A stretch of 58,764 nucleotides of DNA from Leucoraja ocellata (Eukaryota): contig JAWMAR010004164.1 of assembly GCA_036785375.1 (NCBI GenBank), forward strand, positions 1-58,764. Reading direction: 5' to 3'. Shown here one piece after another: positions 1,325 through 47,772 of this stretch. The translations under genes were made by a program, and so were the position numbers. Positions within the stretch are counted from its first letter, which is position 1. Each line of letters begins with the position of its first letter. Under the pieces are notes generated by a model. The model did no database searches. It was not told the DNA's origin and saw only the letters and a list, made by a program, of their open reading frames with translations.

Positions 1325-1771
1325 CCCACACCAACCAAAATGTCCCATCTACACTAGTCCCACACCGACCAACATGTCCCATCTATACTAGTCCCACACC
1401 GACCAACATGCCCCATCCACACTAGTCCCACACCGACCAACATGCCCCATCCACACTAGTCCCACACCGACCAACATGCCCCATCTACACTAGTCCCACA
1501 CTGACCAACATGCCCCATCTACACTAGTCCCACACCGACCAACATGCCCCATCTACACTAGTCCCACACCGACCAACATGCCCCATCCACACTAGTCCCA
1601 CCCCGACCAACATGTCCCATCTACACTAGTCCCACACCGACCAACATGCCCCATCCACACTAGTCCCACCCCGACCAACATGCCCCGTCTACACTAGTCC
1701 CACCCCGACCAACATGCCCCATCCACACTAGTCCCACACCGACCAACATGTCCCATCTATACTAATCCCAC
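1325..1771 (-). repeat. 34-bp minisatellite (~13 units) expanded from a CR1 3' UTR
   Basis: Unit ccccatctacactagtcccacaccgaccaacatg, inside a minus-strand CR1 at ~1303-2160. Confidence 0.95.
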
Positions 1772-5917: not shown

Positions 5918-6264
5918 TGGCCCTGTCCCACTGTATGAGTTAATTCCAAGAGTCTCCTGAGTTTAAAAAAAATCAAACTTGTGGTAAGCACGGAGAATGT
6001 ACGTAGCGGGTACGTCGGAGCTCGGGGACGTCTCTTAGCGGCTCGTAACGCTAACGGCAGGTACTCGGGAAGCTCGGGAAGACTCGTGAAGATTTTTCAA
6101 CATGTGTTGGTCGGGGTGGGACTAGTGCAGATGGGGCATGTTGAAAAATGTCCACGAGAGCCCCGAGTACCGACGAGCGGCCATTACTGTAAATCTCTGA
6201 GTTCGAATCAGGGGCAAACTCGGGAGAACTCTTGGAAATGAACTTGTACAGTGGGACAGGGCTA
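5918..6264. mobile_element. PIF/Harbinger-like MITE, subfamily A
   Basis: TIR TGGCCCTGTCCCACTGTA / TACAGTGGGACAGGGCTA with TAA on both sides (5915-5917, 6265-6267). Confidence 0.85.
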
Positions 6265-6407
6265 TAAGGAGGGCATCGAAATAGTCGTGGGATTTCGAAG
6301 ACGTACTTGTAGGAGTTCGTAGATTACCACGTTCTTGATTTTTTTAGGTCCTTTAAACTAGGCAGAGGTTTTGAATTAATTGTGAGAGAGGGAACCTGAG
6401 GGGCAAC

Positions 6408-6615
6408 TGGGGTAGTGATGAAGATGTGGGGCCTCGTGGACAGCGAGCATCTCCTGCGGGTGTGGGGACCCAACACAGACAGTGGAGCACATAGTCACCA
6501 GTTGCCCCAAACACCGGTCGGCCACCCAATGGTGAACGAGGTCTGATTGGCCTGGACGTTGGCCTGGCTCGCCTCAACGGAGCTGCAGGTCTAAAAGACA
6601 CACGACCGAAGAAGA
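6408..6615 (+). mobile_element. 5'-truncated Ingi/Vingi-like (I-group) LINE 3' end
   Basis: Encodes SCGCGDPTQTVEHIVTSCPKHR (CCHC knuckle) followed by a stop, a very short UTR and (GAA)3. TSD AGGGGCAAC at 6399-6407 and 6616-6624 within a CR1 fragment. Confidence 0.7.
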
Positions 6616-6766
6616 AGGGGCAACCTTTCTTGTGCTAAGGGTGGTGGGCGTTTGGAATGAGGGGGCAGTTGTGGCAGGAACTATCACAATGATTAAAAAA
6701 AACATTGGGACCGGAACATGGATCGGAAAGCTTTAGAAAGGTACTAGATGGGCTAAATGCAGGTAG

Positions 6767-7411
6767 GTGGGACTAGTGTAGATGGGGCATGTTGGTCGGG
6801 GTGGGACTAGTGTAGATGGGGCATGTTGGTCGGGGTGGGACTAGTGTAGATGGGGCATGTTGGTCGGGGTGGGACTAGTGTAGATGGGGCATGTTGGTCG
6901 GGGTGGGACTAGTGTAGATGGGGCATGTTGGTCGGGGTGGGACTAGTGTAGATGGGGCATGTTGGTCGGGGTGGGACTAGTGTAGATGGGGCATGTTGGT
7001 CGGGGTGGGACTAGTGTAGATGGGGCATGTTGGTTGGGGTGGGACTAGTGTAGACGGGGCATGTTGGTCGGGGTGGGACTAGTGTAGATGGGGCATGTTG
7101 GTCGGGGTGGGACTAGTGTAGATGGGGCATGTTGGTCGGGGTGGGACTAGTGTAGACGGGGCATGTTGGTCGGGGTGGGACTAGTGTAGATGGGGCATGT
7201 TGGTCGGGGTGGGACTAGTGTAGATGGGGCATGTTGGTCTGGGTGGGACTAGTGTAGACGGGGCATGTTGGTCGGGGTGGGACTAGTGTAGATGGGGCAT
7301 GTTGGTCGGGGTGGGACTAGTGTAGACGGGGCATGTTGGTCGGGGTGGGACTAGTGTAGATGGGGCATGTTGGTCGGGGTGGGACTAGTGTAGATGGGGC
7401 ATGTTGGTCGG
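6767..7411 (+). repeat. 34-bp G-rich minisatellite (~19 units), reverse complement of the 1325-1771 array
   Basis: Unit gggactagtgtagatggggcatgttggtcggggt. Confidence 0.95.
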
Positions 7412-7748
7412 CATGTGCCTTACAGTTCTCCCTGTGACTGCTGGGTTTTATCCGGGTGCTCCGGTTTCCTCCCACATCCCAAAGACCTGTAGGCTAATTG
7501 GCCCCTAGTGTGCAGGGAGTGGTTGAGAAACTGGGATACCACAGAACTAGCATCAATGGCCGGCGTGGATTTGGCGGGCCGAAGGGCCTGTTTCCAAGCT
7601 GATCTTTCAATCCATCAATTTGCCGTGATGTCTCGTCCACAAGGCACATTAAAGACCAGCAGTGTAATTGGTGTAAAAGTCATTAATTTCCCCCAATATG
7701 CAAGCGGGCATGAGTGTACAATGCTTGCAAGGAACGAGCTGGTGAGAC

Positions 7749-7803
7749 GGGGTGGGGAGATTGCAACCTTCACGTGGTCAGCCCTGTTTCGACGAATGCA
7801 ATC
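7749..7803 (+). ncRNA. Minimal HDV/CPEB3-like self-cleaving ribozyme motif
   Basis: P1 GGGGTGG/CAGCCCT (G1.U wobble, one mismatch), P2 GATTGCA/TGCAATC, P3 ACC/GGT, L3 TTCACGT, J4/2 CGAA; P4 reduced to GTTTCGA. Confidence 0.8.
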
Positions 7804-7879
7804 AACCTGGCGTGCACAATCAAATAGAACAAGTTGTCCTGCAACTTTAGGCTGTGCCCGCCACTCGCAAGAAGAAGAC
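7749..7879 (+). mobile_element. ~130-nt non-autonomous retroelement with 5' HDV-like ribozyme, copy 1
   Basis: TSD GCTGGTGAGAC at 7738-7748 and 7880-7890, (GAA)n tail, near-identical copies at 11408 and 44474. Confidence 0.9.
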
Positions 7880-10564
7880 GCTGGTGAGACCAGGAAAGCT
7901 ACCTTCGGCAATCAGACTTGTGATGAAGTCTTAGCGAGACTTCATCATCCCCTGGCTCTGTGAAAGGAAATGAAACATTTGCCAGAATTCTTCCCTCTCT
8001 ATATCATCGTTCCTCAATTGCGATGTGAATAACAGAGTCTGTATCCAAGGCTGTGACCCCACCCATCAGTCCCCGCCAACTGACCTACTTTACATTCCGG
8101 CTCGGAAGAGCAGCTTTAAAACCTGCATTCTAGGTTGAAATCCTCTTAGAAGCATAGAGACATAGACAATAGGTGCAGGAGTAGAGGCCATTCAGCCCTT
8201 CGAGCCTGCACCGCCATTCAATATGATCACGGCTGATCATCCAACTCAATATCCTGTATCTGCCTTCTCTCCATACCCCCTGATCCCTTTAGCCACAAGG
8301 GCCACATCTAACTCCCTCTTAAATATAGCCAATGAACTGTGTGGCCTCAACTACCCTCTGTGGCAGAGAATTCCACAGATTCACCACTCTACGTGAATTT
8401 TTTTTTTCTCAGCTCTGTCCTAAAAGACTTCCTTCCTCCTTATCCTTAAACTGTGTGACCCCTAGTTCTGGACTTCCCCAACATCGGGAACAATCTTCCT
8501 GCATCTAGCCTGTCCAACCCTTTAAGAATTTTGTACGTTTCTATAAGATCCCCCCTCAATCTTCTTAATTCTAGCGAGTACAAGCCGAGTCTTCCCTAAC
8601 TGTTCCTCATAATAATTTGTGTTTGCACAGGGAACAGGCAGGGCGAGGACTGCAGGCTCTCGTCTCTGAGTGGTATCAGTAAACCAGACGGCTTACTACA
8701 CCAATCTGGTAGTCTTGTAATTATTACCAATGACTATATAAATCGTAGGAGTGGAATTAGGCCATTTGGCCCATCACGGTAGATCTGTGACTCTTCAAGT
8801 TGGAAGATAGACACAAAATGCTGGAGAAACTCAGCGGGTCCAGCAGCATCTATGGAGCGAAGGAAATAGGCAACGTTTCGTGCCGAAACCTGCTGTTTTA
8901 ATCAGTATCCAAACTAGCTTGGTCAACATGGAGAGACATAAAATGCTGGAGTAACTCAGCGGGACTCTGGAGAGAAGGAATGGGTGACGTTTCAGATCGA
9001 GACCTTTCTTCTGTTCTCGACCCGTTCCTTCTCTCCGGAGATGCTGCCTGTCCCGCTGAGTTACTCCAGCATTTTGTGTCTATCTTCCAACTTCTTTACT
9101 ATATCTGAGGCATCAAAAACCAAGGCCATGAAGCTTGGCACCAGTTGTAGTTTGATGAAGAGTTGACCTCAGTTGTACTTGCTTTCCCTGTCTGGTTTGA
9201 CAACGTCCTTCTTTCCTACCCGCTGGTCAGCACGGGTTCAGATTAAGGACGGAAAGTGACCTCATCCTGTTATTTTTAGACCTTGCGTCTGGAGAAAAAA
9301 AAAGCTGACTGTTTCTTGAGAATCCAATCTTGCCTCTCCCTCCCTCACATAGTAAATGCACTGCGGAGTTGTTGGCAGGAGAAGAATATCGTTGCTTTGA
9401 AGAAAGTTAGAGAGTGGCACAGTGGTGCAGCGGTAGAGTTGCTGGCTCACAGCACCAGAGACCCAGGTTCGATCCTGACTACGGGTGCCGTTTGTGCCTT
9501 CTCCTTTTTCTTTCAAATTCTTTTTATTTGTTTTTTTCAAAAGCAAAATAGTAATGATAAACATAACAGTGATATTGATCCAGAGGGATCAGGGTTACAT
9601 TAATGGCAGGTAAAACCTAAATACGAGCCCAGTGTCAACATACACATTGAATATAGACTTCCTGGTCTCTATGTAAATATAGTTACGTGTTTAAAAGAGC
9701 TTATATGTATAAAAACAAAAAGATTTTTTTTTAAAAGATCGAAAAAATGAAATAACAAAACCCCCCTAAACTAAAGAAGAAGAAGAAAAAAATAAATAAA
9801 AACTGAATCTGGACGGCAAAGAGTTTCAACAATTTAAGTCCTTGTTTGTCATCAAGTCCGTTGCACTGTATACCAGTAAAATTATTATAACAGTTGGAGA
9901 GGAGACAGTTCTTGTCGTATGAAAATGTTGAATAACTCTTCCCCAAGTCCGATCAAATTTAACCAAGGGTTCAACAATGTTTGTGTCTTCTCCCTGTGAC
10001 CTGCGTGAGTTTTCTCCAAGATCTTCGGTTTCCTCCCACACTCCAAAGACGTACAGGTTTGTAGGTTAATTGGCTTGGTGTGAATGTAAATTGTCCCCAG
10101 TGTGTGTAGGGTAATGTTGGTGTGTGGGACTCGGTTGGCCGATGAGCATGTTCCCGCACTGTATCTCTAAACTAAACTGAAGTTGTTTCTTTGCTCTGCC
10201 TTTGATACTTCATTTTGAAGGAATCGGATGGAAGGAAGGACAAGGAATTAGTGAGACTGCCTCACCTTTACACCTGCACCTACTGCTGACACTAATTGAA
10301 CCTTGCAGGCAGTATCGCAGTGAGTCATGCCCCATACATCCCACAAAGCTTTGCCCACCAGCTGACATCTGTGTGTTATATTGCTCTTAACTCCCTCTAA
10401 ATGGTGATTATCTGTGTGTGCCTTGTGCTTAAATACATTTGCACTTTGTCAGGAGTGTCGAGAGAAAAAATACAGCGCAGTATTTGGATAGTGTCATTGG
10501 AAACATGAGCCACCAGAATGCACACACATAACCTATGCCAAGAGCCAAGAGCTTCTTCAGATCC

Positions 10565-11128: not shown

Positions 11129-11407
11129 TCTGATATCGAGGGGCAATCAAAACTGTTTGATCACAAATATTCAGTTTCCCTACTTTTGATTTTCAAGTCT
11201 TTGGAAGGTTGATTGCTCAGGGTTTAGGGTGTAGATAGAGTGGATGTGGAGTGGATGTTTCCACTTGTGGGAGAGTCTAGGACTCGGAATCGATGTGTCG
11301 AAAGGAACTGCAGATGCTGGTTTACACTGAAGAGTAATTCTTCGGAGTCTGCAGAAGTGTCTCGACCTGAAAGGTCACCTATTCCTTCTATCCAGTGATG
11401 CTGCCTG

Positions 11408-11542
11408 GGGGTGGGGAGATTGCAAACTTCATGTGGTCCGCCCTGTTTCGACTAATGCAATCAACTCGACGTGCACAAACGGAAGATCAAATAGAACAAG
11501 TTGTCCTACAACTTTAGGCTGTGCACGCCACATGCAAGAAGA
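11408..11542 (+). mobile_element. HDV-ribozyme retroelement copy 2, inserted in a Penelope terminal repeat
   Basis: TSD AGTGATGCTGCCTG (11394-11407) / AGTGATGCTCTCTG (11543-11556). Ribozyme 11408-11462 has J4/2 CTAA and substitutions in P3 and L3. Confidence 0.88.
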
Positions 11543-24725: not shown

Positions 24726-25340
24726 GAGTTACTCCAGCACTCTGTGAAACGTCACCTATCCATGTTCTCCACAGATGCTGCCTGACCCGCTGAGTTACTC
24801 CAGCACTCTGTGAAACGTCACCTATCCATGTTCTCCACAGATGCTGCCTGACCCGCTGAGTTACTCCAGCACTCTGTGAAACGTCACCTATCCATGTTCT
24901 CCACAGATGCTGCCTGACCCGCTGAGTTACTCCAGCACTCTGTGAAACGTCACCTATCCATGTTCTCCACAGATGCTGCCTGACCCGCTGAGTTACTCCA
25001 GCACTCTGTGAAACGTCACCTATCCATGTTCTCCACAGATGCTGCCTGACCCGCTGAGTTACTCCAGCACTCTGTGAAACGTCACCTATCCATGTTCTCC
25101 ACAGATGCTGCCTGACCCGCTGAGTTACTCCAGCACTCTGTGAAACGTCACCTATCCATGTTCTCCACAGATGCTGCCTGACCCGCTGAGTTACTCCAGC
25201 ACTCTGTGAAACGTCACCTATCCATGTTCTCCACAGATGCTGCCTGACCTGCTGAGTTACTCCAGCACTCTGTGAAACGTCACCTATCCAGGTTCTCCAC
25301 AGATGCTGCCTGACCCGCTGAGTTACTCCAGCACTCTGTG
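24726..25340 (+). repeat. 66-bp minisatellite (9 units plus a partial) derived from Penelope pLTR
   Basis: Unit gagttactccagcactctgtgaaacgtcacctatccatgttctccacagatgctgcctgacccgct, nearly invariant. Confidence 0.95.
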
Positions 25341-31131: not shown

Positions 31132-31793
31132 AATGCTGGAGTAACTCAGCGGGTGAGGCAGCATCTCTGGAGAGAAGGAATGGGCGACGTTTCGGGTCGA
31201 GACCCTTCTTCAGACTGGTGTCGGGGAGAGGGTGGGACAAGGAAAATACTGTAAGTAGAGACAGTAAGAGTAGTGGGAGAACTGGGAATGGGGAGGGGGA
31301 GAGAGGGAAAGCAAGGGGTATTTGAAGTTAGAGAAGTCAATGTTCATACCGCTGGGGTGTAAGCTGGCCAAGCGAAATATGAGGCGCTGTTCCTCCAATT
31401 TGCGTTGGGCCTCGCTCTTGACAGTGGAGGAGGCCCAGGACAGAAAGGTCAGTGTGGGAATGGGAGGGGGAGTTGAAGCGCTGAGCTCAAGTAGGAGATC
31501 AGGATAGGTTGGGGCGGACTGAGCGAAGGCGTTCAGCAAAACGATCGCCGAGCCTGCGCTTGGTCTCGCCGATGTAGAGAAGTTGACACCAGGAACAGCG
31601 GATACAGTAGATGAGGTTGGAGGATGCTGGTTTAAACTGAAGGTCGACACACACAGTGCTGGAGTAACTCGGCGGGACAGAAGGAATGGGTGACGTTTCG
31701 GGTCTGAAGAAGGGTCTCGACCCAAAACGTCACCCATTCCTTCTCTCCAGAGATGCTGCCTGCCCCGCTGAGTTACTCCAGTATTTTGTGTCT
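31132..31793 (-). mobile_element. Penelope-like element 3' part: GIY-YIG endonuclease remnant, pLTR and inverted pLTR
   Basis: Minus strand from ~31622 reads SSNLIYCIRCSWCQLLYIGETKRRLGDRFAE and, after frameshifts, EAQRKLEEQRLIFRLASLHPSGMNIDFS. An inverted terminal repeat lies at ~31700-31793. Confidence 0.9.
31186..31213 (-). ncRNA. Minimal type-I hammerhead ribozyme core in Penelope pLTR
   Basis: CTGAAGA-A-GGGTC TC GACCC-GAAAC-GTC on the minus strand. Confidence 0.6.
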
Positions 31794-34300: not shown

Positions 34301-36173
34301 CATGGTTGGCTGTGTGTACCTCTGCTCCACATTCACAGGCTGGGCTATGGCGGACTGACTGAGGGGAGCTAATGGATATTTATCGCCGAGAGTCGGTGCA
34401 GCTTTTGTGCATTCACTTTTCAAGCTGTCAATGATTTTTTTGTTTGCCTTGAGATGTGGCATTGTTCCTTGTGATCAGCGGGGATTACTGATGGATTTCA
34501 TATTGTGGGTAAAACTACTGGGCAACCTGTCACATTGGAAGGAAGGCTTTGTCCTGCCACTGTGTGTTTTTTGACGTTCATGTTCGTATCATCGAGAGGG
34601 TCAGAGTTTATTGGCGTTTCTTAACCCACCCTCTCTAGAGAAGAATGGTGTTAGGAAGGAACTGCAGATGCTGGTTTACACCGAAGATAGGCGCACAAAA
34701 ATGCTGGAGTAACTCAGCGGGACAGGCAGCATCCCTGGAGAGAAGGGTCTCGACCCGAAACGTCACCCCTTCCTACTCCGCAGAGATGCTGCCTGTCCCG
34801 CTGAGTTACTCCAGCTTTTTGTGTCTGCCTTCCTTTCAGGGAAGGGTTGTTTGAGTACAATATACAATAGAAAATAGGTGCAGGAGGAGGCCATTCGGCC
34901 CTTCGAGCCAGCACTGCCATCCACTGTGATCACGGCTGATCATCCACAATCAGTACCCCGTTCCTGCCTTCTCCCCATATCCCCTGACTCCGCTATCTTT
35001 AGAAACATAGAAAATAGGTGCAGAAGGAGGCCATTCGGCCCTTCGAGCCACCACCGCCATTCATTGTGATCATGGCTGATCGTCCCCAATCAATAACCCG
35101 TGCCTGCCTTCTCCCCATATCCCTTGACTCCACTAGCCCCTAGAGCTCTATCTAACTCTCTCTTAAACCCATCCAGTGATTTGGCCTCCACTGCCCTCTG
35201 TGGCAGGGAATTCCATAAATTCACAACTCTCTGGGTGAAATTTTTTTTTCTCACCTCAGGCTTAAATGACCTCCCCTTTATTCTAAGACTGTGTGTGGCC
35301 CCTGGTTCTGGACTCGCCCACCATTGGGACCATTTTTCCTGCATCTAGCTTGTCCAGTCCTTTTATAAATTTATATGTTTCTATAAGATCCCCCCCTCAT
35401 CCTTCTAAACTCCAGTGAATACATGCCCAGTCTTTTCAATCTTTCCTCATATGACTGTCCCGCCATCCCAGGGATCAATCTGGTGAACCTACGCTGCACT
35501 GCCTCAATCACAAGGATGTCCTTCCTCAAATTAGGAAACCAAAACTGTACACAATACAATCTTTAAGAGCTCTATCTAGCTCTCTCTTGAAAGCATCCAG
35601 AGAATTGGCCTCCACTGCCTTCTGAGGCATAGTTCATTGCAGCCAGTGCTGTGCTAGATTAATCTGCAGCCTCAGACAGCCTATCTTTCAAGCAATGGGC
35701 TCTGCCTTGGTCAACATAGAGTGAAAAATCTTTGTCTGCCGACTGCTATACCATACGGTGGAAGCACAGTGGCCCTGGTTATTGAAGCTGTGTTAGAGGA
35801 TTAAGTGGGATCCAGTCCCACTTTCGGCTTTGCTATATCTTAGTAGAGATATAATTCTAAATTCTCTTAACTTGGCAAACCAGCGCTAAACTGTGATTTA
35901 TCAGAGTATTCTGCAAAAAGTGACAAACTTCACCTTTTCTCAATCCACTCCTGCTGTGTCGACCCAGAACCGACATCAGAGGTCAATAGACAAAGACTAA
36001 AAATAGGCTAGTGTGATCCGGTCAAAGCTGCCCGCAAGTCCTGACAGAAAATTGACGTATTTCACCTTTATCTTCCTTCACTCCAGTTATTTTTGCTGAA
36101 GTACTTTGTAGGGGAAGGCAACGCAGAGGCTGGAAATCTAAAAATAACACGAGGGGAGGTCAGAGATGCTCAG

Positions 36174-42038: not shown

Positions 42039-44473
42039 TAACTCAGCGGGACAGGCAGCATCTCTAGAGAGAAGGAAATGGGTGAAGTTTCCTTCTCTCC
42101 ACAGACGCTGCCTGTCCCGCTGAGTTACTCCAGCTTTTTTGTGCCTATCTTTGGCCACATGTTATCGCTGCTCCACTTGTACACTTCAACATGAGGAGAG
42201 GAGTTATCATTCTGTTTTTGCTCAGCGCAGAAAGAATTGAATGGGAGTGAGCCAGTGATGTTAGTGGCCAAGCGATCAGTCACAGATATCGCTCCTCACA
42301 CTGACATCCACGTCCCCACAAATCAATTAGAACATTCATTGTGTGAAACAAAGTCCTTCCAAACATCAAGTCCTTTATCACTTTGTTAACCCTGCTCGAC
42401 AATCGAGTTACAGTCACTGTCATCGAAACATAGAAAATAGGTGCAGGAGGAGGCCATTCGGCCCTTCGAGTCAGTGCCGCCATTCATTGCGATCATGGCT
42501 GATCGTCCCCTATCAATAACCCTTCTCCCCATATCCCTTGACTCCACTAGCCCCTAGAGCTCTATCTAACTCTCTCTTAAATCCATCCAGTGACTTGGCC
42601 TCCACTGCCCTCTGTGGCAGGGAATTCCACAAATACACAACTCTGGGTGAAAAAGTTTTTTCTCACCTCAGTCTTAAATGACCTCCCCTTTATTCTAAGA
42701 CTGTGTGTGGCCCCTGATTCTGGACTCGCAACATTGGGAACAATTTTCCTGCATCTAGCTTGTCCAGTCCTTTTGTAATTTTACATGTTTCTATAAGATC
42801 CCCCCCTCATCCTTCTAAAACTCCAGTGAATACACGCCCAGTCTTTTCAATCTTTCCTCATAATGACAGTCCCGCCATCCCAGGGATCAATCTGGTGAAC
42901 CTACGCTGCACTGCCTCAATCACAAGGATGTCCTTCCTCAAATTAGTCTCTGGAGCTGTGCGGCTTTGGACTGTGGGAGGAAACCTAAGATCTCGGAGAA
43001 AACGCACGCGGGTGATGAGGAGGAGCTACAAACTCCGTCGATCAAACCCGGGGTCTCTGGCGCTGTGAGGCAGCAACTCTACCGCTGCACTACCATGCCG
43101 CCCCAACCCGTCATTCTCTGCTTTAAAAATACCCGATGAAACCAACTAAAACCTCATGCAAGATTTTCTCTTTGCATTCAATAAAGTGCCCTGCAAATAC
43201 ATTCCTGCAGTGTATATTTTTGGAAGCTATTAAATAAATGAAGCTAAGTAGAAATGCTAATATTAGGCAGTCAAGTGATCCTCAAGCATGGTTTACAAAA
43301 TGGGATTCATAATCTCAGCCAACAATCCCATCTCCTCAATTGGTTTGAAGGAATAGGGATTATTCCATCAGTATTTGATGAATTCCTTGCAATCATTAAC
43401 CACTTGATATTATGGATCTTGTCACTGCTTTATGAGCATGCTGTCATTTATAGAATACTTTTATTATGCAACTGGATTGAAGATTTACCCAGGAGATGAA
43501 TGAGTAGGACCCAGTGTGCAGTCTCTGGCACATAGACTATGTCATATGCTGAGAGAATGGAGCGGCTGGGCTTGTACACTCTGCAGTTGAGAAGAATGAG
43601 GGGGTCTTATTGAAACATATAAGATTGTCAAGGGTTTGGACATGCTAGAGGCAGGAAACATGTTCCCGATGTTGGGGGAGTCCAGAACCAGGGGCCACAC
43701 AGTTTAAGAAGGTACACATAAATGCTGGAGAAACTCAGCGGGTGCAGCAGCATCTACGGAGCGAAGGAAATAGGCAACGTTTTGGGCCGAAACCCTTCTT
43801 CAGACACGGCCACAGTTTAAGAATAAGGGGTTAGCCATTTAGAATGGAGACGAGGAAACACTTTTTCTCACAGAGAGTTGTGAGTCTGTGGAATTCTCTG
43901 CCTCAGAGGGCGGTGGAGGCCGGTTCTCTGGATATTTTCAAGAGAGAGCTAGATAGGGCTCTTAAAGATAGCGGAGTCAGGGGATATGGGGAGAAGGCAG
44001 GAACGGGGTACTGATTGGGGATGATCAGCCACGATCACATTGAATGGCGGTGCTTGCTCGGGGCCGAATGGCCTACACATATTGTCTATGTGATCATCAA
44101 AGGAACCATCGTCAGCTGAAGTACATTGGATAGATTGAGGGGTCTGAAGAAGGGTCTCGACCCCTGTCTCCTTTCGGTAAGGTTTAGAGGGAGATGGGCC
44201 AAATGCAGGCAGGTGGGACTAGTGTAGATGGGACATCTTGGACGGCATGGGCAAGTTGGGCTGAAGGGCCTGTTTCCATGTTGTATGCCTCGAAAGTAAA
44301 TTTACGATTCACTAAACTAAATGAGCACGCTGTCGTTGATAGAATATTTTTATTATGTAACTGGATTGAAGATTTACCCAGGCTGGAGATAAATGAGTAG
44401 GACCAGCGTGCAGTCTCTGGCACGTGGACTATGTCATATGCTGAGAGAATGGAGGTGATACAGGAGCAAAAAT

Positions 44474-44600
44474 GGTGGGAGATTGCAACCTTCACGTGGT
44501 CCGCCCTGTTTCAACGAATGCAATCAACCTGGTGTGCACAATCAAATAGAACAAGTTGTCCTACAACTTTAGGCTGTGCACGCCACACGCAAGAAGAAGA
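44474..44600 (+). mobile_element. HDV-ribozyme retroelement copy 3 (lacks the first two G residues)
   Basis: Perfect TSD AGGAGCAAAAAT at 44462-44473 and 44601-44612. Ribozyme body to 44525 with intact P2, P3, L3 and CGAA. Confidence 0.88.
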
Positions 44601-45425
44601 AGGAGCAAAAATAATATCTTCATAAATGTGGAGAATAGAGGATGTTTGCATGAGGCCAAGATCATTGTATATATTTACAGTAGTGTGCAGGGCAGGCTGG
44701 ATTGATGGGGAATTTGCCCAATTATCCCCATTTTGATGGGTTCTAGTAATGACACCAATCGGTGCCAGAAACTCCCACATTTCACTGATGAAGAACAGTA
44801 AAGCATGAACGGTTTAAGAAACATGCCAATTGTTTTTGTTTGTGATGAGCTTCACACAGCAGCCTAATGGAAGTCATTACTGCAGTTGACAGTGTTGGTT
44901 CTGCTGCATATCATCCGCTAATTCTCCCAGCTCCCGCACAACAACTCATTGGAATAATTTCAATTGGTGCCTTTTTCTGGATGACACTGAATCTTATGCT
45001 GAAGGTCCCCACTCACTCGCTGCTCTCTTAATGTACCAGCTGGTTGACCTTATTCAACACTGCAAAACTAAGGGGACTTTGTTCTTCTTGTTCTACAAGG
45101 CGCAGTGTGTATGAAGAGAATCATTTATGAAGGGAATTTGTTTATTTAGTTTAGTAAGTAAGTAAGTTTATTGGCCAAGTATTCACATACAAGGAATTTG
45201 CCTTGGTGCTCCGCCCACAATTGTATTGTATTGTATTGTATTCAAATTTATTGTCATTGTCTCAATTTGAGACAACGAAATGAATTTCCCTTACAGGCAG
45301 TATCATTAAAAAATAAAAATAAAAATCATTCAAAAAAAGAAAGAAAAAAATAAATAATAAATAAATAATAAAACATATTAAAAATAAAATTGAAATTGAA
45401 ATTGAGCAACAAGTAACAACATGAC

Positions 45426-47422: not shown

Positions 47423-47772
47423 GGTACACAAAAAAGCTGGAGAAACTCAGCGGATGCAGCAGCATCTATGGAGCGATGGAAATAGGCAACGTTTTGGGCC
47501 CGAAACCCTTCTGGAAATAGGCAACGTTTCGGGCCCGAAAACCTTCTGGAAATAGGCAACGTTTCGGGCCCGAAATCCTTCTGGAAATAGGCAACGTTTC
47601 GGGCCCGAAAACCTTCTGGAAATAGGCAACGTTTCGGCCCGAAACCCTTCGGGTTTCGACCCGAAACGTTGCCTATTTCCTTTGCTCCATAGATGCTGCT
47701 GCACCTGCTGAGTTTCTCCAGCTTTTTTGTGTACCTTCGATTTTCCAGCATCTGCAGTTCCTTCTTAAACAC
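47423..47772. mobile_element. Palindromic Penelope pLTR pair with an internal ~35-bp tandem array
   Basis: Inverted arms (acacaaaaaagctggagaaactcagc / gctgagtttctccagcttttttgtgt) around about five copies of ggaaataggcaacgtttcgggcccgaaaaccttct. Confidence 0.85.

What the first reader, a model, noticed from the sequence alone, without database searches (positions are those of the whole stretch)
7749..7879. A ~130-nt mobile element consisting of a minimal HDV/CPEB3-like ribozyme plus a LINE-type tail (copies at 7749, 11408, 44474)
Seen: three dispersed copies, each with its own 11-14 bp TSD and a (GAA)n tail, and no Pol III A/B boxes. The consensus first 55 nt parse as GGGGUGG(P1)-GGA-GAUUGCA(P2)-ACC(P3)-UUCACGU(L3)-GGU(P3')-CCGCCCU(P1')-GUUUCGA-CGAA or CUAA(J4/2)-UGCAAUC(P2'). 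In copies 1 and 2 the TSD abuts the predicted G1 exactly. Known: this is the HDV nested double-pseudoknot order with a G1.U wobble and the catalytic C in J4/2. L3 UUCACGU and CGAA match the mammalian CPEB3 ribozyme as I recall it. HDV-like ribozymes process the 5' ends of R2 and ingi/L1Tc-type retroelements. Inference: a promoterless SINE-like parasite that cuts itself out of host transcripts, with P4 reduced to a loop, and is copied by an Ingi/Vingi LINE. I am not aware of a description in elasmobranchs but cannot search to confirm novelty.
Basis: partly seen in the sequence, partly recalled or inferred. Interest (0 to 1): 0.9.

Follow-up and report, generated by a model that had tools for sequence, protein, structure and literature searches.

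The report
Ribozyme-headed mini retroposon family
A very abundant jumping element of about 130 bases whose first 55 bases have the shape and key letters of a minimal hepatitis-delta-type self-cutting RNA, so it could cut itself out of host transcripts; the cutting has not been shown.

Summary
The window has three copies (7749-7879, 11408-11544, 44474-44600), each with an 11-13 bp target-site duplication and a (GAA)n tail. Contigs from public runs show a very large family in several coded organisms. Its 5' end is sharp at GGGGT and its 3' end is a variable (GAA)n.

The first 54-55 nt fit the HDV-like nested double pseudoknot, with the predicted cut exactly at base 1. They carry G1.U, a 3-bp P3, L3 UUCACGU, CGAA before P2', and no P4. 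A strict descriptor hit only 7749 on both strands, against 4 hits in 150 shuffled windows, but I tuned it after seeing the element.

Rfam's CPEB3 model is the only ribozyme model reported, at 12.9 and 12.7 bits against a threshold of 35. Three copies give no covariation, and no raw RNA reads were available. No tRNA or B-box signal was found.

Best reading: a bipartite non-autonomous LINE (SIDE-like) headed by a minimal HDV-like ribozyme. Catalysis is untested and the LINE partner's clade is unresolved. Eight other first-reader notes on this genome describe the same element, none followed up. I found no paper describing it.

The parts
7738..7748 (+). 5' target-site duplication of copy 1 (GCTGGTGAGAC)
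   Evidence: Identical 11-mer at 7880-7890
7749..7803 (+). Predicted minimal HDV-like ribozyme head of copy 1 (55 nt; 54 nt in most family members). The predicted cut is just 5' of 7749.
   Evidence: Descriptor hits; CPEB3 model alignment; pair counts
7749..7755 (+). P1 5' strand GGGGUGG. G7749 would pair with U7785 (G.U at the cut site).
   Evidence: Pairs with 7779-7785. 6 of 7 pairs in copy 1 and 7 of 7 in copy 2. 7780 reads C in 89% of X1 depth.
7759..7765 (+). P2 5' strand GAUUGCA
   Evidence: 7 of 7 pairs with 7797-7803 in all 3 copies
7766..7778 (+). P3 (ACC), L3 (UUCACGU) and P3' (GGU)
   Evidence: L3 is identical to the Rfam CPEB3 consensus. ACC...GGU with a 7-nt L3 also appears in the Drosophila R2 catalytic-region primers printed in PMC3414825.
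7779..7785 (+). P1 3' strand (CAGCCCU in copy 1; C at 7780 in most copies)
7786..7792 (+). J1/4 (GU) plus a 5-nt linker UUCGA where P4 would be. G7786 can pair with the L3 C at 7771 (a one-pair P1.1).
   Evidence: 7791 G>A in about 15% of depth.
7793..7796 (+). J4/2 CGAA. C7793 is the predicted catalytic C.
   Evidence: Aligned to CGAA of the CPEB3 consensus. No variant of 10% or more is listed at 7793.
7797..7803 (+). P2 3' strand UGCAAUC
7808..7863 (+). 3' domain: an 11-bp outer stem (7808-7818 with 7853-7863) around a 7-bp hairpin (7831-7837 with 7841-7847). Probably the module a LINE reverse transcriptase recognises.
   Evidence: RNAalifold consensus of the 3 copies: 20 pairs, no compensatory change. 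Also seen in the MFE fold.
7869..7879 (+). (AAG)3 tail plus AC
   Evidence: Tail length varies between family members (loose ends behind 7878).
7880..7890 (+). 3' target-site duplication of copy 1
11408..11544 (+). Copy 2, the older long subfamily with 8 extra bases after GCACA. TSDs at 11395-11407 and 11544-11556.
   Evidence: Perfect P1, but P3, L3 and J4/2 each carry one change. The indel subfamily shows as loose ends at 7819 and 7826.
44474..44600 (+). Copy 3. It lacks the first 2 G. TSDs at 44462-44473 and 44601-44612.
   Evidence: CPEB3 model 12.7 bits.
6408..6616 (+). 5'-truncated LINE fragment: end of an ORF with a zf-RVT-type Cys/His motif, about 13 nt of 3' UTR, and a (GAA)3 tail. 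TSD GGGGCAAC at 6400-6407 and 6617-6624. A candidate relative of the partner LINE, not shown to be the partner.
   Evidence: Terminal 18 nt are 15/18 identical to the element's end.

Best explanation
The element is a bipartite non-autonomous LINE derivative (SIDE-like) with no promoter of its own. It is transcribed as part of longer host or read-through transcripts. Its first 54-55 nt fold into a minimal HDV-like ribozyme without P4 and cut the RNA just 5' of G1. That gives an RNA whose 5' end is the element's first base. The 3' stem-loop domain and the (GAA)n tail are bound and primed on by the reverse transcriptase of a LINE with the same tail type. That enzyme copies the RNA into a new nick by target-primed reverse transcription and creates the 11-13 bp TSDs. 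Shown here: the retroposon anatomy, the very high copy number, the sharp 5' and 3' ends, the absence of a Pol III head, and the fit of the head to the HDV-like fold and core letters. Inferred: catalysis, read-through transcription, and the identity of the partner LINE.
For: There are three TSD-flanked copies with (GAA)n tails. In four public runs, 7915, 7426, 382 and 142 contigs were laid on the element. Summed depth reached 3-4 million against 23-50 in the flanks. The tool warns this is no copy number, but 3 copies in 58 kb agrees in order of magnitude. The best-supported 5' loose ends lie at 7755 and 7758. Their loose letters end in GGGGT or GGGGTGGA, and the sequence upstream of that does not agree between contigs (agreement 0.43-0.6). 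So the family's 5' end is the first G. The head fits P1(7)-J1/2-P2(7)-P3(3)-L3(7)-P3'-P1'-linker-CGAA-P2' with G1.U. With core letters required, the only hit on both strands of the window is 7749, against 4 hits in 150 dinucleotide shuffles. The CPEB3 ribozyme model is the only ribozyme family reported for copies 1 and 3. Its alignment matches L3 UUCACGU, CCCUGU and CGAAU. No variant of 10% or more is listed at the predicted catalytic C, and the 10% C>T at 7780 would keep a G.U pair. P1+P3 (-8.7 to -8.9 kcal/mol) plus P2 (about -6 to -7) together exceed the pseudoknot-free MFE of -10.8 to -12.5. Precedent seen in passages: Drosophila R2 and R2/R1 SIDEs need only a 5' ribozyme and a 3' end (PMC3414825). 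P4 is absent in active silkmoth R2 ribozymes (PMC3774820). Minimal HDV-like ribozymes lack P4 (PMC10879173). Bipartite non-autonomous LINEs are known for RTE, Ingi, Vingi and R2 (PMC5786205).
Against: No cleavage data exist. Rfam scores are far below threshold (12.9 and 12.7 bits against 35; E 0.84 and 0.97, similar to plainly spurious hits in the same calls), and copy 2 gave no ribozyme hit. No HDV-family model other than CPEB3 was reported. cmscan placed P1 in a shifted 4-bp register rather than the 7-bp one. There were no compensatory changes (0 of 18 pairs, 3 copies). MFE z-scores are unremarkable (+0.59 and +0.41). Base pairing alone is weak evidence: the lax descriptor gives about 10 chance hits per shuffled window with a perfect P1 and about 97 with one mismatch. 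With a perfect P1 required, the strict descriptor hits none of the three real copies. I tuned the strict descriptor after seeing the element. A sharp 5' end would also follow from a defined transcription start. In the runs guessed to be RNA, several contigs run through the 5' end into upstream sequence (records 9, 17, 22). Those are uncleaved RNA or DNA. No LINE carrying this head was found.
Confidence: 0.62

Rival explanations
1. The head is the retained 5' end of a parent LINE and is kept for another reason, such as an internal Pol II promoter or a protein-binding site. It has an HDV-like shape but little or no catalytic activity in this family. The 5' end would then be set by transcription initiation.
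For: A sharp 5' end fits a defined start site equally well. In trypanosomes the same 77 nt act as both promoter (Pr77) and ribozyme (abstract of PMC3383444 seen in the listing). Rfam scores are sub-threshold. There is no covariation.
Against: All the core features are present together and the predicted cut falls exactly at base 1: G1.U, U and G in L3, one-pair P1.1, C then AA in J4/2. No parent LINE with this head was seen. A 54-nt promoter of this kind is not documented in vertebrates, to my knowledge.
Confidence: 0.17
2. The HDV-like parse is a chance resemblance. The element is an ordinary LINE-dependent retroposon of unknown head origin, and only the P2 hairpin or some other fold matters.
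For: The lax descriptor is common by chance. The MFE folds prefer other inner pairings. I chose the strict descriptor after the fact.
Against: The strict descriptor gave 1 real hit at 7749 against 0.027 expected per window. That hit coincides with the 5' end defined independently by TSDs and contigs. L3 is 7 of 7 identical to the CPEB3 consensus, and CCCUGU and CGAAU also match.
Confidence: 0.13
3. It is a classical Pol III SINE with a degenerate head derived from tRNA, 5S, 7SL or an snRNA.
For: Its size, copy number, TSDs and LINE-type tail are SINE-like.
Against: No Rfam match to any small RNA at gathering level in the window, nor at E<=10 in the three copies. ARAGORN finds nothing in the copies. 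No B-box match with <=2 mismatches lies inside them. A 55-nt head is shorter than a tRNA.
Confidence: 0.03

Closest known systems
R2 SIDEs and R2/R1 hybrid SIDEs of Drosophila (Eickbush and Eickbush 2012, PMC3414825; abstract and passages read)
   Same: Both are short, ORF-less non-autonomous elements made only of a 5' HDV-like ribozyme and a 3' end recognised by a LINE's machinery. Neither is a Pol III element. P3/L3/P3' here (ACC-UUCACGU-GGU) resembles the R2 catalytic block printed in that paper's primers.
   Different: SIDEs are site-specific in rDNA, present in few copies, co-transcribed by Pol I, and have larger ribozymes. This family is dispersed and very abundant, sits in a vertebrate-type repeat landscape, has a 54-55 nt head without P4, and ends in a (GAA)n tail. 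Its activity is untested, whereas SIDE ribozymes were shown to cleave.
NARTc/L1Tc and other Pr77-bearing elements of trypanosomatids (PMC3185411, PMC4035085, PMC3383444; abstracts seen in the listing)
   Same: These are dispersed non-autonomous partners that share the LINE's 5' HDV-like ribozyme and release themselves from co-transcripts.
   Different: The Pr77 ribozyme is 77 nt and doubles as a promoter. Those elements have poly(A) tails and a protist host. No sequence relation was tested here.
Mammalian CPEB3 ribozyme (Rfam RF00622)
   Same: It has the same order of helices, the same L3 (UUCACGU), the same CCCUGU after P1, and the same CGAAU before P2'.
   Different: CPEB3 is a single-copy intronic ribozyme of mammals with a P4 helix. 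Here P4 is replaced by 5 nt, the P1, P2 and P3 letters differ, the score is 12.9 bits against a threshold of 35, and the context is a retroposon head. The element is not a member of this family.
Minimal HDV-like ribozymes without P4 (metagenomic drz, theta ribozymes; PMC10879173, passage read) and silkmoth R2 ribozymes lacking P4 (PMC3774820)
   Same: They have the double-pseudoknot core without a P4 helix.
   Different: Those are phage, metagenome or insect rDNA elements. This one heads a dispersed vertebrate-type retroposon.
Bipartite non-autonomous LINEs of RTE, Ingi, Vingi and R2 (Kojima 2018, PMC5786205; section 23 read)
   Same: They have a 5'-end-plus-3'-end architecture without an ORF. 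The paper suggests a 5' ribozyme may explain why the true 5' end is kept.
   Different: Membership needs identity to both ends of an autonomous LINE. Here only 15 of 18 terminal bases match a nearby LINE fragment, and no LINE with this head was found.

Membership tests
HDV-like ribozymes | Nested double-pseudoknot order P1-P2-P3-P3'-P1'-(P4)-P2', with P1' directly after P3' and P2' directly after J4/2 | tested here: met
   Descriptor hits at 7749 and 11408. 88.9% of 54 cells are paired, against 20-46% when partners are slid by 1-3 columns. The structure was derived from these same sequences, so that control favours it.
HDV-like ribozymes | About 7-bp P1 that starts at the cut site with a G.U pair | tested here: met
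   Copy 2 has 7 of 7 pairs and copy 1 has 6 of 7. The majority letter C at 7780 (89% of X1 depth) restores 7 of 7. G1.U is present in copies 1 and 2. Copy 3 is 5'-truncated.
HDV-like ribozymes | Catalytic C in J4/2 followed by purines, and the L3 core letters (U at L3 position 1, C for P1.1, G near the 3' side). The roles of these residues are recalled from HDV structures, not taken from a call. | tested here: met
   CGAA lies directly 5' of P2' in copies 1 and 3, and CUAA in copy 2. L3 is UUCACGU in copies 1 and 3, and UUCAUGU in copy 2. PMC3774820 states that the catalytic C and an L3 G matter in R2.
HDV-like ribozymes | P4 helix | tested here: not met
   Only 5 nt (UUCGA) lie between J1/4 and J4/2. 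P4 is not a strict requirement: it is absent in active silkmoth R2 ribozymes and in minimal drz.
HDV-like ribozymes | Covariation supporting the helices | tested here: inconclusive
   0 of 18 pairs show a change on both sides, and only 3 near-identical copies were available. No further copies were found in the collections. Per-site variants of 10% or more fall at 3 sites in the head (7780, 7791, 7794; the first two are CpG transitions) and 3 in the 3' part, leaving out 7841 and 7865 where copy 1 itself differs from the majority. This is not informative.
HDV-like ribozymes | Score at or above an Rfam gathering threshold | tested here: not met
   There were no gathering-level hits in the window. 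The best was CPEB3 at 12.9 and 12.7 bits against 35, and copy 2 gave none.
HDV-like ribozymes | Site-specific self-cleavage giving a 5'-OH at G1 | not testable with these tools
   All runs were kept as contigs, which cannot show RNA ends.
CPEB3 ribozyme (RF00622) | Gathering score and a conserved P4, in an intron of CPEB3 in mammals | tested here: not met
   The score is 12.9 bits against 35, and P4 is replaced by 5 nt. The sequence is the head of a dispersed repeat, not a single-copy locus.
Bipartite non-autonomous LINE / SIDE | No ORF, TSDs, a LINE-type 3' end and tail, and precise ends | tested here: met
   The element is 125-137 nt and has no room for a protein.
Bipartite non-autonomous LINE / SIDE | 5' and 3' parts match the ends of an autonomous LINE in the same genome | tested here: inconclusive
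   Only the terminal CACACG-NNN-(GAA)3 matches the LINE fragment at 6408-6616 (15 of 18).
Pol III SINE | Head derived from tRNA, 5S, 7SL or snRNA, with A and B boxes | tested here: not met
   The B-box consensus I used is recalled.

The most novel reading that the evidence does not exclude
This family, or its unseen LINE parent, belongs to an old vertebrate lineage of ribozyme-headed retroposons with a CPEB3-type active site, and the single-copy mammalian CPEB3 ribozyme is an exapted head of such an element. In addition, the roughly 10^4-10^5 copies would be the largest set of potentially active self-cleaving ribozymes in any vertebrate genome. Sense-oriented intronic copies would cut host pre-mRNAs and so come under orientation-dependent selection.
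Probability: 0.15. Interest if true: 0.85.

Novelty: new member of a known kind. Interest (0 to 1): 0.62.

Why it matters
If the head cleaves, this would be one of the smallest natural eukaryotic HDV-like ribozymes. It would also be by far the most numerous in a vertebrate-type genome, since it heads a 130-nt retroposon that makes up a sizeable repeat family in several organisms. That would extend the idea of a ribozyme head plus a LINE tail from rDNA-specific insect SIDEs and trypanosome elements to a dispersed, highly successful family. It would give a natural test bed, with thousands of variants, for sequence-function maps of a minimal ribozyme without P4. It would also raise two testable questions. 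Do tens of thousands of intronic self-cleaving RNAs affect host transcripts? Is there a link to the CPEB3 ribozyme, whose active-site letters it shares?

Tried and rejected
**Rfam.** The gathering-level search of the whole window found nothing. In E-value mode, copy 2 gave no ribozyme hit.

**Pseudoknot-free folding.** The whole element and the head fold no better than shuffles (z +0.59 and +0.41).

**Lax base-pair descriptor.** I rejected it as evidence. It fires on GT-rich arrays and about 10 times (perfect P1) or about 97 times (one mismatch) per shuffled window.

**Strict descriptor with perfect P1.** It hit 0 real copies, because each of the three copies carries one defect. I relaxed it to allow one P1 mismatch. 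I did not build a majority or consensus sequence.

**Covariation.** There is none with three copies, and none in the 3' domain either.

**More copies.** Exact or degenerate head patterns gave 0 matches in metagenome contigs (2 scans), viral contigs and genome contigs. My own covariance model found only the three copies. The next best hit was 12.2 bits at E 0.3.

**Partner LINE.**
- A 37-aa C-terminal piece gave 11 hits at E<=0.001.
- Several were unrelated repeat proteins (P0001, P0003, P0005).
- The relevant ones were short zf-RVT fragments without names, one of them from a teleost.
- The clade is not resolved. Ingi/Vingi is neither supported nor excluded.

**RNA 5' ends.** They could not be read. 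All 23 runs were contigs and none is on record as RNA.

**Papers.**
- Searches found no description of this element.
- Repbase and Dfam could not be consulted, so an existing repeat-library entry cannot be excluded.
- Ruminski 2011, Webb 2009, Webb and Luptak 2011 and Kojima 2011 are not held. What I say of them comes from other papers' citing passages or from recall.
- Supplements were not opened.
Full report
**What is there.** The window holds three + strand copies of a 125-137 nt element: 7749-7879, 11408-11544 and 44474-44600.
- blastn of copy 1 against the window (word 7, E<=10) gave these 3 matches (100%, 95.2% and 86.1% identity). The only other matches were 6 chance hits of 11-14 nt.
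- Copy 1 is flanked by an exact 11-bp TSD (7738-7748 and 7880-7890). Copy 3 has an exact 12-bp TSD (44462-44473 and 44601-44612). Copy 2 has a 13-bp TSD with 2 mismatches (11395-11407 and 11544-11556).
- All three end in (AAG)3-4.
- Copy 2 carries 8 extra bases in the middle and more substitutions, so it belongs to an older long subfamily.
- Copy 3 lacks the first two G.

**The family outside the window.** Sampled words of 7700-7930 are held by 23 listed public runs from 12 studies and coded organisms A-G.
- Fourteen runs, from organisms A-E, hold 0.30-0.50 of the words, which is about the element's share of the query.
- All runs are stored as contigs, and none is on record as RNA.
- I laid four runs on 7650-7980 at 85% likeness or more. 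This placed 7915, 7426, 382 and 142 contigs (X1, X3, and the runs guessed to be RNA, X18 and X16).
- Summed word depth in the element reached 3.07 and 4.04 million, against 23 and 50 in the flanks. The tool warns that this is not a copy number. Three copies in 58 kb points to the same order of magnitude, 10^4 to 10^5.
- In X1 the contigs split 636 / 2336 / 3614 / 1329 at >=99%, 95-99%, 90-95% and <90% likeness to copy 1.
- Contigs of X1 and X3 bridge from the unique flanks into the element on both sides (records 1, 8, 25, 32). So this particular insertion is shared by organisms A and B.

**The ends of the family.**
- The best-supported 5' loose ends lie before 7755 (171, 156, 21 and 3 contigs) and before 7758 (66 in X1, 16 in X18).
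- Their loose letters end in GGGGT or GGGGTGGA. Further upstream the contigs do not agree (agreement 0.43-0.6).
- So the family starts at the first G. Most members have one G fewer after the T than copy 1, which makes the head 54 nt.
- No other 'before' position inside the head is among the listed rows, but 304 rows were not shown.
- The 3' loose ends lie behind 7877-7878, after (GAA)n of varying length.
- Loose ends at 7819 and 7826 mark the indel subfamily of copy 2.

**The head.** In copy 1 the parse is:
- P1, 7749-7755 (GGGGUGG)
- J1/2, 7756-7758
- P2, 7759-7765 (GAUUGCA)
- P3, 7766-7768 (ACC)
- L3, 7769-7775 (UUCACGU)
- P3', 7776-7778 (GGU)
- P1', 7779-7785
- GU plus UUCGA, 7786-7792
- J4/2, 7793-7796 (CGAA)
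- P2', 7797-7803 (UGCAAUC)

P2 pairs 7 of 7 in all copies. P1 pairs 7 of 7 in copy 2 and 6 of 7 in copy 1. The A at 7780 is private to copy 1: 89% of X1 depth reads C there, and 10% reads T, which would still pair with G. P3 is intact in copies 1 and 3. The L3 C at 7771 can pair with G7786, giving a one-pair P1.1. There is no P4.

**Is the fit more than chance?**
- Base pairing alone is not. A descriptor that asks only for the helices gave 5-14 hits per shuffled window (10 shuffles) with a perfect P1, and 86-104 with one mismatch. It also fires on the window's GT-rich arrays.
- I then added L3 = 7 nt, P2 of at least 7 bp, C-N-A-A directly before P2', and the C-G P1.1 pair. With a perfect P1 this left 0 real hits, because each copy has one defect. 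The 150 shuffles gave 7 hits without the P1.1 rule and 0 with it.
- With one P1 mismatch allowed, the only real hit on either strand was 7749. The 150 shuffles gave 60 hits without the P1.1 rule and 4 with it, or 0.027 per window.
- I chose these settings after seeing the element, so the figure is indicative only.
- The stronger point is that the predicted cut site coincides with the 5' end fixed independently by the TSDs and by thousands of contigs.

**Rfam.**
- Nothing in the window reaches a gathering score.
- In E-value mode on 221-nt stretches, the CPEB3 ribozyme model was the only ribozyme family reported. It scored 12.9 bits (E 0.84) on copy 1 and 12.7 bits (E 0.97) on copy 3, against a threshold of 35. 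It was absent on copy 2.
- Unrelated families scored similarly in the same calls, so the score alone proves nothing.
- The printed alignments do show identity to the CPEB3 consensus at L3 (7 of 7), at CCCUGU after P1, and at CGAAU before P2'. P4 (16 model positions) is replaced by 3 unaligned bases.
- cmscan put P1 in a shifted, shorter register.
- The block ACC-L3-GGU also resembles the Drosophila R2 catalytic region as printed in primers of PMC3414825.

**Other structure tests.**
- MFE folding without pseudoknots is unremarkable (z +0.59 and +0.41).
- P1+P3 evaluates to -8.7 to -8.9 kcal/mol, P2 alone to about -6, and the isolated duplexes to -11.3 (P1, copy 2) and -7.4 (P2). The MFE alternatives are -10.8 and -12.5. 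So the double pseudoknot is energetically plausible.
- Covariation is uninformative: 0 of 18 pairs changed on both sides.
- Across the family, variants of 10% or more in the head are at 7780, 7791 and 7794. 7780 C>T and 7791 G>A are CpG transitions; 7794 reads both A and T. None is listed at the predicted catalytic C, 7793.

**It is not a Pol III SINE.** ARAGORN's only hit in the window is at 13939. None of 99 B-box-like matches lies in a copy, and the window has fewer such matches than shuffles do (the motif is recalled). No small-RNA family matches.

**The 3' part.** An 11-bp outer stem (7808-7818 with 7853-7863) encloses a 7-bp hairpin (7831-7837 with 7841-7847), followed by about 6 nt and the (GAA)n tail. 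Two one-sided changes keep G.U pairs, and there are no compensatory changes. This is the usual look of a 3' module recognised by a stringent LINE reverse transcriptase. That is inference.

**The partner LINE.**
- At 6408-6616 lies a 5'-truncated LINE end with its own 8-bp TSD. It holds the end of an ORF with a Cys/His motif (C-x-C...H...C), a very short 3' UTR and (GAA)3.
- Its 37-aa piece found 11 proteins at E<=0.001. Six of the 11 show sub-threshold to significant zf-RVT (PF13966) matches. The closest are unnamed short fragments, and one is from the teleost Aldrovandia affinis.
- The element and this LINE share only CACACG-NNN-GAAGAAGAA at the very end, 15 of 18 bases.
- The clade is unresolved.
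- No LINE with this head was found in the window.

**Expression.** The element occurs in 382 and 142 contigs of two small runs that the tool only guesses to be RNA. Several of those contigs run through the 5' end into unrelated upstream sequence (records 9, 17, 22). This could be read-through RNA, unprocessed RNA or DNA. Contigs cannot show RNA ends. In X18 the upstream letters tend to be (GAA)n, and one joint (7817 to 7755) carries GGGGT, so head-to-tail or partial tandem copies exist.

**Comparison with what is known.**
- Next are trypanosome NARTc and L1Tc (abstracts seen in the listing).
- Kojima 2018 lists RTE, Ingi, Vingi and R2 as the clades with bipartite non-autonomous derivatives. 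[quoted passage not shown]
- P4 is absent in active silkmoth R2 ribozymes (PMC3774820, passages and section 16). P4 is also absent in minimal metagenomic HDV-like ribozymes (PMC10879173, passage).
- So the mechanism is a known kind. New here would be a dispersed, extremely abundant family with a 54-55 nt head lacking P4 and a CPEB3-type core.
- It is not a member of the CPEB3 family: threshold, P4 and locus are all unmet.

**Novelty search.** The paper searches, and a search for an 18-nt string of the head, found no description. Repbase, Dfam, supplements and several key subscription papers could not be seen. Eight other first-reader notes on other pieces of this genome describe the same element, and one describes its 3' module. 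None has been followed up, and they are not independent evidence.

**Verdict.**
- The retroposon reading is secure.
- The ribozyme reading is well motivated but rests on fit, position and precedent, not on covariation or cleavage.
- The Ingi/Vingi and elasmobranch statements are untested.
- I put 0.62 on the full mechanism as stated.

Noticed in passing
window 1325-1771 and 6766-7411 (plus one unit near 6110-6140): Two 34-bp tandem arrays (13 and 19 units) have consensus units that are reverse complements of each other apart from one base. They form a large inverted pair around about 5 kb.
   Followed up: no
window 6408-6616: A 5'-truncated LINE end with an 8-bp TSD, a frameshifted ORF end with a zf-RVT-type motif, about 13 nt of 3' UTR and a (GAA)3 tail. 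Its relatives are short unnamed fragments, one from a teleost.
   Followed up: partly
window 13939-14013: ARAGORN calls a tRNA-Ala(GGC)-like fold, probably the head of a tRNA-derived SINE.
   Followed up: no
window 24726-25340; 47477-47650; 34867-35135: Further tandem arrays: 66 bp x 9.3 at 99% match, 35 bp x 5, and 140 bp x 1.9.
   Followed up: no
window 7650-7980, as laid in runs X1 and X3: The copy-1 insertion is present at the same locus in coded organisms A and B. The flanks differ at a few sites, and X1 has a 14-nt deletion at 7903. So the insertion predates their split, or they are close strains.
   Followed up: partly
window 7749-7817, as laid in run X18: In the run guessed to be RNA, the letters upstream of the element's 5' end tend to be (GAA)n, and a joint from 7817 to 7755 carries GGGGT between. 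Head-to-tail or partial tandem copies therefore exist.
   Followed up: no
window 31186-31213: Another first-reader note reports minimal hammerhead cores in Penelope-like terminal repeats here. I did not examine it.
   Followed up: no
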